From contig OZ316898.1 in the NCBI GenBank assembly GCA_973895155.1, forward strand, positions 5,009,079 through 5,073,078: 64,000 bases of DNA, given 5' to 3'. Position numbers and translations under genes: made by a program. The notes under the pieces were generated by a model. That model did no database searches. It worked only from the letters and a program-made list of their open reading frames with translations, and was not told the origin of the DNA. Source of the DNA: Marsupella aquatica (Eukaryota; Plantae; Marchantiophyta). Below, one piece after another: positions 6,925 through 7,508 of this stretch (the stretch's first letter is position 1; each line of letters opens with the position of its first letter).

Positions 6925-7333
6925 ACTTACTGTGGAAGGAGCCGCGCCTTGTTGGCCTCATCAGCTGACCAACTGCATGACATGATCGCCTTGTCGAGAT
7001 TTCAAAGTAGCCAGATTGCGCGGTTGCTCGTACACCCACACCTCTTGCACACAACCTCCTCTTCCGAGATCCAAATCTCTCGATGTTTGAGTGCACCAAG
7101 TGTGGGTGCATGAGCAACTACGTGATCTAACACACAGATTAAGACTGCACTTGCATGTGGCCCAGATCTACAATCCTCTCTTCCTCTCTTCTCTTCACAT
7201 AGATGTACTCAGCAAATGCTCCGACTTTGCATCCGCTTCTCCAAAAGGAGTGCTTCAAGCCCCAAGGGCCTGGGCTACCGGTTGCTTGAGGAACACTTAG
7301 TTCCTTCTACGAACGTAAGGCACTTCGTCATCC
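6925..7333 (-). pseudogene. Degenerate NLR NB-ARC (winged-helix/MHD region) relic, colinear with exon 4 of the HNL genes
   Basis: 7198-7215 is identical (18 nt) to 16099-16116. 7240-7285 matches 16141-16186 at 36/46 nt (QPVAQALGA*STPFG vs QRVDQALAAWSTAYG). 7321-7333 is identical to 16270-16282 (DDEV). 7009-7044 matches the MHD region at 28/36. A minus-strand GTAAGT donor at 6930 sits in phase 0 at the same distance from the MHD motif as the exon-4 donor of copy 1. Confidence 0.85.
7013..7128 (-). ncRNA. Candidate pre-miRNA/hairpin 1, stem derived from NLR MHD-motif coding sequence
   Basis: Arms 7013-7050 and 7091-7128 pair without gaps at 33/38 positions on the + strand or 32/38 on the - strand (counting G:U), around a 40-nt loop. 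7100-7129 reads VWVHEQLRDL. Strand is inferred; there are no expression data. Confidence 0.55.
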
Positions 7334-7380
7334 TCAGCGTCAGACCAGGCCCTAGACAGCACAAACTAGGTGACAGTAGT

Positions 7381-7508
7381 GGCTAGATCACGCTGCAACT
7401 CGTGCACACATACCTCTTCACACTCCTCTTCTCTTTCGAGATCCAAATAATTGAAGTGAGGTGTAGGTGCACAAGGTGTGGGTGCACGAACAGCTACGAG
7501 ATCTGGCC
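7381..7508 (-). ncRNA. Candidate pre-miRNA/hairpin 2 (tandem paralogue of hairpin 1)
   Basis: Arms 7381-7415 and 7474-7508 pair without gaps at 28/35 (+) or 29/35 (-). The loop shares CCTCTT..CAC..CCTC..TT.CGAGATCCAAAT with hairpin 1. 7476-7508 reads VWVHEQLRDLA. Confidence 0.5.

What the first reader, a model, noticed from the sequence alone, without database searches (positions are those of the whole stretch)
7100..7505. One arm of the two hairpins has diverged only at synonymous codon positions although it is not in a gene
Seen: 7100-7129 is GTG TGG GTG CAT GAG CAA CTA CGT GAT CTA and 7476-7505 is GTG TGG GTG CAC GAA CAG CTA CGA GAT CTG. All five differences are third-position and synonymous (VWVHEQLRDL); the chance under random placement is roughly (1/3)^5. 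The opposite arms show no such constraint (VWVYEQPRNL vs VCVHELQRDL). Inference: selection is keeping pairing to a diversified coding-gene family, like the wobble-position variation in the miR482 family. This would make the minus-strand 5' arm the guide. The guides specify VWVHEQ while the three local genes have IWVHEH, leaving several mismatches, so the best targets may be paralogues elsewhere in the genome.
Basis: partly seen in the sequence, partly recalled or inferred. Interest (0 to 1): 0.8.

Follow-up and report, generated by a model that had tools for sequence, protein, structure and literature searches.

The report
NLR-derived twin hairpins, codon-periodic arm
Next to three liverwort immune-receptor (NLR) genes lie two hairpins built from a dead copy of such a gene, and the arm that could silence the gene family has changed only at silent codon positions, hinting at (not proving) a working small-RNA regulator of a kind so far known only in seed plants.

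Summary
7100-7129 and 7476-7505 differ at 5 bases, all third-codon and synonymous in the frame VWVHEQLRDL.

The two hairpins (about 7005-7136 and 7378-7511) share loop and flank homology. They are therefore tandem duplicates of one ancestral hairpin, not separate copies of different paralogues. That hairpin arose by a short inverted duplication inside a decayed NB-ARC exon on the minus strand.

The constrained arms are the inverted copies. On a minus-strand transcript they are antisense to the MHD-motif codons of the hydrolase-NLR (HNL) family. The original exon arms decayed at all codon positions.

VWVHEQLRDL is a natural HNL variant. Every difference between the two arms is a site and nucleotide that also varies among 11 real HNL genes.

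Points against: there is no expression or small-RNA evidence, and in-genome targets could not be searched. The arm as a whole is not significantly slower than the loop, hairpin 2 is decaying, and the local genes are only borderline targets.

Best reading (about 0.5): a candidate NLR-targeting miRNA-like locus in a liverwort. The same stretch was also noted by first readers as s1-766303 and s1-766369.

The parts
7097..7132 (+). A1: inverted copy of the MHD-motif segment in hairpin 1. It is sense to NLR mRNAs, so its reverse complement is the candidate guide arm (5' arm of a minus-strand transcript). Core 7100-7129 reads VWVHEQLRDL.
7010..7044 (-). S1: the MHD segment in its original place in the decayed NB-ARC exon (EVWVYEQPRNLA). 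It forms the opposite arm of hairpin 1.
7045..7096 (.). Upper stem and loop of hairpin 1. The symmetry centre is near 7070.5, with a small terminal GAGAT/ATCTC stem.
7473..7508 (+). A2: inverted MHD copy in hairpin 2 (core 7476-7505, VWVHEQLRDL). Its reverse complement is the second candidate guide arm.
7380..7416 (-). S2: opposite arm of hairpin 2, a decayed sense MHD copy (EVCVHELQRDLA).
7417..7472 (.). Upper stem and loop of hairpin 2. It is homologous to the hairpin 1 loop (76% identity).
7286..7636 (.). The second tandem-duplication unit (about 351 nt). It carries hairpin 2 and splits the relic exon. It corresponds to about 6909-7285.
7193..7285 (-). Relic NB-ARC exon piece, homologous to NLR 16186->16093 (72% identity, E 2e-8; QPVAQALGA*STPFG...LLSTSM).
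7637..7707 (-). Relic NB-ARC exon piece, homologous to NLR 16246->16181. This is the segment immediately upstream in the gene. It is now separated from the next piece by the duplicated unit.
6916..6930 (-). Two GTAAGT splice-donor-like motifs, colinear with the exon-end donor (GTAAGT) of the intact genes.
16012..16041 (-). MHD-motif site of NLR gene 1 (IWVHEHLRDL). It is a borderline match to antisense 21-mers from A1 and A2 (penalty 4.0 and 4.5). Identical sites lie at 31878-31907 and 45356-45385.

Best explanation
This is a candidate NLR-silencing small-RNA locus that grew out of an NLR pseudogene.

Shown steps:
1. A fourth, decayed member of the tandem hydrolase-NLR cluster lies on the minus strand.
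2. A short inverted duplication of its MHD-motif segment made a foldback.
3. A tandem duplication of about 350-376 nt made two foldbacks.

Inferred steps:
1. The locus is transcribed on the minus strand, the strand of the NLR genes, as a transcript carrying both hairpins.
2. A Dicer-like enzyme releases 21-22-nt RNAs from the 5' arms (the reverse complements of 7100-7129 and 7476-7505).
3. These RNAs pair with the codons for [IV]WVHE[HQ]LRDL in HNL mRNAs and lower their level.

Every possible target is held constant at codon positions 1 and 2 by protein function but varies at position 3. A guide mutation at position 1 or 2 therefore loses all targets, while one at position 3 only swaps one subset of paralogues for another. 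This would explain why the guide arms diverged only at wobble positions while the passenger arms decayed at all positions.
For: - Periodicity: 5 of 5 core differences, and 7 of 9 over the unselected arm, are third-position (P 0.0018 and 0.0025).
- Positions 1+2 of the A arms show 0/20 changes, against 22/81 in the opposite arm plus loop (Fisher P = 0.004).
- The shared A-arm change at offset 20 (CTG to CTA relative to S1, S2 and the local genes) is also third-position.
- Common descent of the hairpins: loop 76% and near flank 69% identical, both beyond all shuffles.
- Ancestry: two consecutive NB-ARC exon pieces and the in-place MHD copy lie colinear on the minus strand.
- Both hairpins fold well (z -5.2 to -6.5).
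- VWVHEQLRDL is the motif of several real HNLs.
- Among 11 distinct HNL gene sites, variation is at 9 of 10 third positions, 4 first positions and no second position. Each A1/A2 difference uses a site and nucleotide pair seen among genes.
- A1's antisense 21-mer has penalty 1.0 on a real liverwort HNL site (L003).
- Wobble-restricted diversity is documented for miR482/2118, miR1507 and miR6024, and NLR-derived inverted repeats are an accepted source of such miRNAs (PMC5026261).
Against: - There is no evidence of transcription, processing or small RNAs.
- The genome's other NLRs could not be reached, so well-matched targets are unproven.
- The three local genes are only borderline targets (penalty 4.0-4.5). 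Antisense 21-mers from the opposite arms on a plus-strand transcript score the same (4.0-5.0).
- Total divergence of the A arm (17%) is not significantly below that of the loop and opposite arm (27%, P = 0.19).
- Hairpin 2 has four transversion mismatches and looks to be decaying.
- G:U against A:C patterns do not favour either strand.
- In a 601-nt context the minimum-energy fold pairs A2 with S1 (a nested structure) rather than giving two local hairpins.
- No comparable inverted MHD copy lies within 10 kb of seven Calypogeia fissa HNL genes.
- The whole signal rests on 5 to 9 substitutions.
Confidence: 0.5

Rival explanations
1. The locus is a neutral relic. The foldbacks are by-products of rearrangement in a decaying NLR pseudogene, are not processed into functional small RNAs, and the third-position pattern is a small-sample coincidence.
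For: - Arms, loop and near flank have similar identity between the two copies (71-83%, 76%, 69%).
- A-arm overall divergence is not significantly reduced (P = 0.19).
- Hairpin 2 is accumulating transversion mismatches.
- The local genes are poor to borderline targets.
- Inverted repeats over NLR exons are common by-products in NLR clusters (PMC5026261).
- No such element lies near seven C. fissa HNL genes.
Against:
- The sister arms of the same hairpins show no periodicity.
- Base composition does not explain it. First positions are 9/10 G or C and took no hit in the core, while 4 G:C-to-A:T changes all fell on third positions.
Confidence: 0.3
2. Patching by gene conversion. After the tandem duplication, one or both A arms were overwritten by short conversion tracts from different HNL paralogues. 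The synonymous-only differences were then made by protein-level selection in the donors, not at this locus.
For: - Every A1/A2 difference is a variant also present among real HNL genes.
- A1 is 24/26 identical to the site of an HNL from another liverwort sample (L003).
- The flanking codons of A1 (Q) and A2 (K...AE) are residues seen at those places in real HNLs.
Against: - Homology between arms and genes is only about 36 nt at 80-88% identity, a poor substrate for conversion.
- The S arms lie in the same orientation as the neighbouring genes and should be better recipients, yet carry six amino-acid-changing substitutions.
- No donor with either exact sequence exists in the window. The three local genes are identical to one another at the site and differ from both arms at 6 positions.
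Confidence: 0.12
3. The sense arms are targets, not guide templates. A plus-strand non-coding transcript carries two conserved MHD-like sites 376 nt apart. These are recognised by an MHD-directed small RNA made elsewhere, as a decoy or a two-hit siRNA-generating transcript.
For: - Two conserved sense sites lie at a fixed spacing.
- Both strands fold equally well.
- Codon periodicity would also follow if the sites must keep matching a guide that tracks the gene family.
Against: - No MHD-directed guide is known here.
- Each site sits base-paired inside its own foldback, which would hinder access.
- This model needs an extra unknown component.
Confidence: 0.05

Closest known systems
miR482/2118 superfamily (seed plants), which targets NLR P-loop codons
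   Same: A small-RNA guide complementary to the codons of a conserved NLR motif. Diversity among family members is concentrated at positions opposite third codon positions (PMC5026261). It is thought to have arisen from inverted duplication of NLR genes.
   Different: The motif differs (MHD, not P-loop). There is no sequence similarity and no Rfam miRNA match. The lineage is a liverwort, whereas this family is reported from gymnosperms onward (PMC5026261, PMC6132428). Here there are only two copies and no expression evidence.
[quoted passage not shown]
   Same: Both arms are homologous to an NLR exon. The locus sits inside an NLR cluster. The parental gene context (exon relic) is still visible. 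The predicted targets are relatives of the progenitor gene.
   Different: The inverted segment is very short (about 36-70 nt) and lies within a single pseudo-exon, not at a junction of two convergent genes. It was then tandemly duplicated. Processing into small RNAs is unknown.
miRNAs that target the MHDV-motif codons of NLRs in seed plants (a category shown in Fig. 3B of PMC5026261)
   Same: The same protein motif region of NB-ARC is the complementary site.
   Different: The origin is independent. The motif here is the liverwort HNL form [IV]WVHE[HQ]LRDL. No homology was tested, because the paper's text does not give those miRNA sequences.

Membership tests
Plant MIRNA locus (annotation criteria as I recall them from Axtell and Meyers 2018; from knowledge, not a tool) | A foldback of 300 nt or less, whose miRNA/miRNA* duplex has at most 5 mismatched positions and at most 3 in asymmetric bulges | tested here: met
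   The hairpins are about 130 nt. On the minus strand, offsets 3-23 of hairpin 1 have 3 mismatches plus 2 G:U and no asymmetric bulges. Hairpin 2 has 4 mismatches plus 3 G:U, which is borderline.
Plant MIRNA locus (annotation criteria as I recall them from Axtell and Meyers 2018; from knowledge, not a tool) | Small-RNA sequencing shows precise excision of a miRNA and miRNA* pair, replicated in independent libraries | not testable with these tools
   No small-RNA or RNA-seq data are reachable. The species itself could not be identified or retrieved.
miR482/2118 superfamily | Mature sequence and precursor homologous to miR482/2118, complementary to P-loop (GMGGVGKTT) codons | tested here: not met
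   The Rfam scan at E up to 10 gives no plant miRNA family. The complementary site is the MHD motif, about 290 codons downstream of the P-loop (GMGGIGKTT) in the NB-ARC exon ORF.
Target-gene-derived (inverted duplication) small-RNA hairpin | Both arms are homologous to the presumed target gene family, in opposite orientations | tested here: met
   blastn against the NLR genes gives A1 88%, A2 85%, S1 80% and S2 81% identity at the MHD site, with E from 4e-5 to 6e-3. The exon relic is colinear around S1.
Target-gene-derived (inverted duplication) small-RNA hairpin | Complementarity of arm-derived 21-mers to family members within the usual target-prediction threshold | tested here: inconclusive
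   The penalty is 4.0-4.5 on the three local genes (threshold about 4) and 1.0-3.0 on an HNL site from another liverwort sample.
Guide under target-driven (wobble) diversification, as in PMC5026261 | Differences among guide copies are concentrated opposite third codon positions of the target site, and are absent from the passenger arm pattern | tested here: met
   In the A arms, 5/5 core differences and 7/9 full-extent differences are at position 3 (P 0.002-0.003). In the S arms, 5 of 10 differences are at position 3. There are only two copies, so power is low.
Hydrolase-NB-ARC-LRR (HNL) class of liverwort NLRs (the neighbouring genes and the progenitor) | NB-ARC plus LRR, with an N-terminal alpha/beta-hydrolase-like domain | tested here: inconclusive
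   NB-ARC and LRR are met by Pfam. The N-terminal ORFs have no Pfam hit. The closest full-length relatives from Calypogeia fissa have an N-terminal FFHG...GHSxGG region, and one has a weak DUF676 hit.

The most novel reading that the evidence does not exclude
This is a working NLR-targeting miRNA-like locus in a liverwort. That would be an independent, convergent origin of the NLR/small-RNA feedback outside seed plants. All stages of its birth would still be legible (pseudo-exon, inverted duplication, tandem duplication), and its two guides would already be diversifying at wobble positions to cover different HNL paralogues.
Probability: 0.4. Interest if true: 0.75.

Novelty: new member of a known kind. 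Interest (0 to 1): 0.55.

Why it matters
The papers read here place the first small-RNA control of NLR genes at the origin of gymnosperms (PMC5026261, PMC6132428). A large survey found NLR-associated 21-nt siRNA enrichment only in angiosperm groups: rosids, asterids, Amborella and wheat (PMC7111516).

If this liverwort locus is functional, the same solution evolved independently in a bryophyte, against a lineage-specific NLR class. That solution is a silencer born from the receptor family itself, aimed at a conserved motif and diversifying at wobble positions.

The locus would also be an unusually clear snapshot of how such a regulator is born from a pseudogene. If it is not functional, it is an ordinary rearranged pseudogene fragment with a coincidental pattern.

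Tried and rejected
- **Rfam:** a scan of 5000-10000 at E up to 10 gave only chance animal miRNA and snoRNA matches far below threshold.
- **Independent copies:** 'each arm is an independent copy of a different paralogue' is rejected, because loop and flank are homologous between the hairpins.
- **Coding:** 'the constrained arms are coding' is rejected. There are flanking in-frame stops, no shared ORF and no ATG.
- **Arm against loop rate:** the arm is not significantly slower overall, so this test does not support constraint on its own.
- **Strand choice:** G:U against A:C patterns are balanced, so no call is possible.
- **Compensatory changes:** there is one candidate (offset 17, A-T in hairpin 1, G-C in hairpin 2). 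That is about what chance gives for three coincident sites.
- **Reaching the genome's other NLRs:**
  - the word search gave nothing above 54% identity;
  - an exact look-up of the WD40 ORF failed;
  - the HMMER representative search gave mostly Calypogeia fissa relatives at 42-61% identity;
  - The search of earlier findings by sequence and by words was blank.
- **Metagenome scan:** a scan for any DNA encoding [IV]WVHE[HQ]LRDL found 0 matches, and the collection evidently lacks even the JGI contig L003.
- **Literature:** a search for the arm sequences and for bryophyte NLR-targeting miRNAs found none. The Marchantia miRNA paper mentions only 'LRR gene' targets, and its supplements are not held.
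- **Analogous hairpins elsewhere:** a search for inverted MHD copies in seven 25-kb C. fissa HNL loci found none.

Full report
**What is in the sequence**

The window carries three tandem NLR genes on the minus strand. Their NB-ARC exon ORFs are 15874-17022, 31989-32897 and 45224-46387, and their LRR ORFs are 14214-15704, 29908-31473 and 43632-45044 (Pfam). The NB-ARC exons are 92-95% identical to one another.

The nearest relatives are hydrolase-NB-ARC-LRR proteins. Most of the nearest ones, and all seven full-length ones I retrieved, are from the leafy liverwort Calypogeia fissa, at 42-61% identity. The window is therefore from a liverwort whose own proteins I could not retrieve.

The MHD-motif region of the three genes reads EIWVHEHLRDLAK. 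Its DNA is identical in all three.

**The observation**

Segments 7100-7129 and 7476-7505 both translate to VWVHEQLRDL and differ at five bases. All five are third-codon and synonymous. The frame is fixed by homology: both segments match the coding (minus) strand of the MHD sites at 16012-16041, 31878-31907 and 45356-45385.

The pattern survives without those limits:

| Test | Result |
|---|---|
| Whole NLR-homologous arm (-3..32): 7 of 9 differences third-position | P = 0.0025 |
| Run of six or more third-position differences | P = 0.0009 |
| Core only, hypergeometric | P = 0.0018 |

A sixth change is also third-position. Both arms share CTA at offset 20, where the opposite arms and the local genes have CTG.

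Base composition does not explain the pattern. First positions of this motif are 9/10 G or C and took no change in the core.

**Anatomy and history**

Each segment is the plus-strand 3' arm of a foldback. Hairpin 1 has arms 7010-7044 and 7097-7132; hairpin 2 has arms 7380-7416 and 7473-7508. Both fold far better than shuffles on either strand (z -5.2 to -6.5).

The hairpins are homologous along their whole length:

| Segment | Identity between hairpins 1 and 2 |
|---|---|
| Plus-strand 5' arm | 71% |
| Upper stem and loop | 76% |
| Plus-strand 3' arm | 75% (83% in the 30-nt core) |
| 58 nt of flank | 69% |

They are therefore tandem duplicates of one ancestral hairpin.

On the minus strand, 7707->7637 matches NLR 16246->16181. 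Next, 7285->7193 matches the immediately following NLR segment 16186->16093 (72% identity, E 2e-8). The arm at 7044->7010 is the MHD segment in its proper colinear place. GTAAGT donor-like motifs follow at 6930-6916, where the intact genes have their exon-end donor.

The history is therefore as follows:
1. A fourth cluster member decayed into a pseudogene.
2. A short inverted duplication of its MHD segment created a foldback.
3. A unit of about 350-376 nt (about 6909-7285) was tandemly duplicated, placing hairpin 2 (in 7286-7636) inside the relic exon.

This confirms the earlier first-reader note s1-766369. It also means the constrained arms (A1, A2) are the inverted copies, and the unconstrained arms (S1, S2) are the original exon sequence.

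**Contrast between arms**

S1 and S2 read EVWVYEQPRNLA and EVCVHELQRDLA. They differ at 10 of 30 core sites: 3 first-position, 2 second-position and 5 third-position. Six of the changes alter an amino acid.

A-arm positions 1 and 2 show 0/20 differences. The figures for comparison are 5/20 in the S arms and 22/81 in S arm plus loop (Fisher P = 0.024 and 0.004). Total A-arm divergence (5/30) is not significantly below the rest (P = 0.19). The signal is therefore periodicity, not general slowness.

**Relation to real genes**

[IV]WVHE[HQ]LRD[LF]A is the MHD motif across the liverwort HNL family. The exact VWVHEQLRDL form occurs in several members.

I compared 11 distinct gene sites (the window, nine C. 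fissa genes from seven retrieved loci, and two unidentified liverwort contigs). The core varies at 9 of 10 third positions, at four first positions (I/V, one L/F change and synonymous Leu/Arg changes) and at no second position.

Each A1/A2 difference is a site and nucleotide pair that also varies among genes: C/T at 11, G/A at 14, A/G at 17, T/A at 23 and A/G at 29.

An antisense 21-mer from A1 has penalty 1.0 on one such foreign site. On the three local genes the best penalties are 4.0 (A1) and 4.5 (A2), which is borderline. They are no better than antisense 21-mers from the opposite arms on a plus-strand transcript (4.0 and 5.0).

**Interpretation**

The pattern is what the published model for NLR-targeting miRNAs predicts. 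Zhang et al. 2016 (PMC5026261) found that diversity among miR482/2118, miR1507 and miR6024 copies falls opposite third codon positions of the target site. They also found that such miRNAs arise from inverted repeats of NLR genes and target conserved motifs, MHDV included.

My best reading (confidence about 0.5) is a minus-strand transcript carrying both hairpins, whose 5' arms give guides antisense to HNL MHD codons. Only the anatomy and ancestry are shown. Transcription, processing, strand and targeting are inferred.

Both hairpins share a 5'-U in two registers (7120->7100 and 7496->7476; 7125->7105 and 7501->7481). This is compatible with AGO1-type loading but proves nothing.

**Evidence against, and rivals**

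There are no expression data and no access to the genome's other NLRs. Specific points against are:
- Hairpin 2 carries four transversion mismatches.
- G:U against A:C patterns are balanced between strands.
- The 601-nt minus-strand fold prefers a nested structure pairing A2 with S1.
- No inverted MHD copy lies within 10 kb of seven C. fissa HNL genes.

The rivals are:
- **Neutral relic with chance periodicity (0.3).**
- **Short gene-conversion patches from paralogues (0.12).** This is disfavoured because the better-oriented S arms are not patched and homology is only about 36 nt.
- **Sense arms as target or decoy sites on a plus-strand transcript (0.05).**

**Novelty**

The mechanism is a known kind. 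Its occurrence in a bryophyte, against the liverwort-specific HNL class, would be new relative to the papers I could read. Those papers date NLR-regulating miRNAs from gymnosperms onward (PMC5026261, PMC6132428) and report NLR siRNA enrichment only in angiosperm groups: rosids, asterids, Amborella and wheat (PMC7111516). The Marchantia miRNA survey mentions only 'LRR gene' targets (PMC4788410).

I cannot exclude that the species has published small-RNA data, since the species is unidentified.

The same stretch was flagged by first readers as s1-766303 (tandem hairpin MIRNA candidate) and s1-766369 (exon relic).

Noticed in passing
window 7800-8730: Just upstream of the relic on the minus strand is a block of nested direct repeats. 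Units of about 200 nt contain 61-nt sub-repeats (families D1-D8, identity 63-97%). The block lies between the relic exon piece at 7637-7707 and a weak NB-ARC-like match at 8814-8927.
   Followed up: no
window 6960-7560 (minus strand): Because there are four related MHD copies, the minimum-energy fold of the whole two-hairpin region is a nested long foldback (A2 with S1 outside, S2 with A1 inside) rather than two side-by-side hairpins. z is -7.1.
   Followed up: partly
window 14214-19206, 29908-35064, 43632-48531 (minus strand): Three tandem NLR paralogues lie at a spacing of about 14-16 kb, with NB-ARC exons 92-95% identical. Their MHD-site DNA is identical over 39 nt. The N-terminal ORFs (18385-19206, 34303-35064, 47704-48531) have no Pfam hit, although relatives carry a hydrolase-like FFHG...GHSxGG region.
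   Followed up: partly
window 53463-54662 (+): A 399-aa ATG-started ORF encodes a WD40 beta-propeller protein (WD40 E 4e-23). No identical product is on record in the public collection.
   Followed up: partly
window 6758-6852 and 6437-6514: Two short tandem duplications lie just beyond the relic's donor-like motifs: 43-nt units 52 nt apart (93% identity) and 37-nt units 41 nt apart (97% identity).
   Followed up: no
L004:13312 and L004:24041 (Calypogeia fissa CBCUJL010000026.1): Two neighbouring C. fissa HNL genes have MHD sites that differ at only 2 of 39 bases (QVWVHEQLRDFAS and EVWVHEQLRDFAS). Here Phe replaces the Leu of the motif.
   Followed up: no
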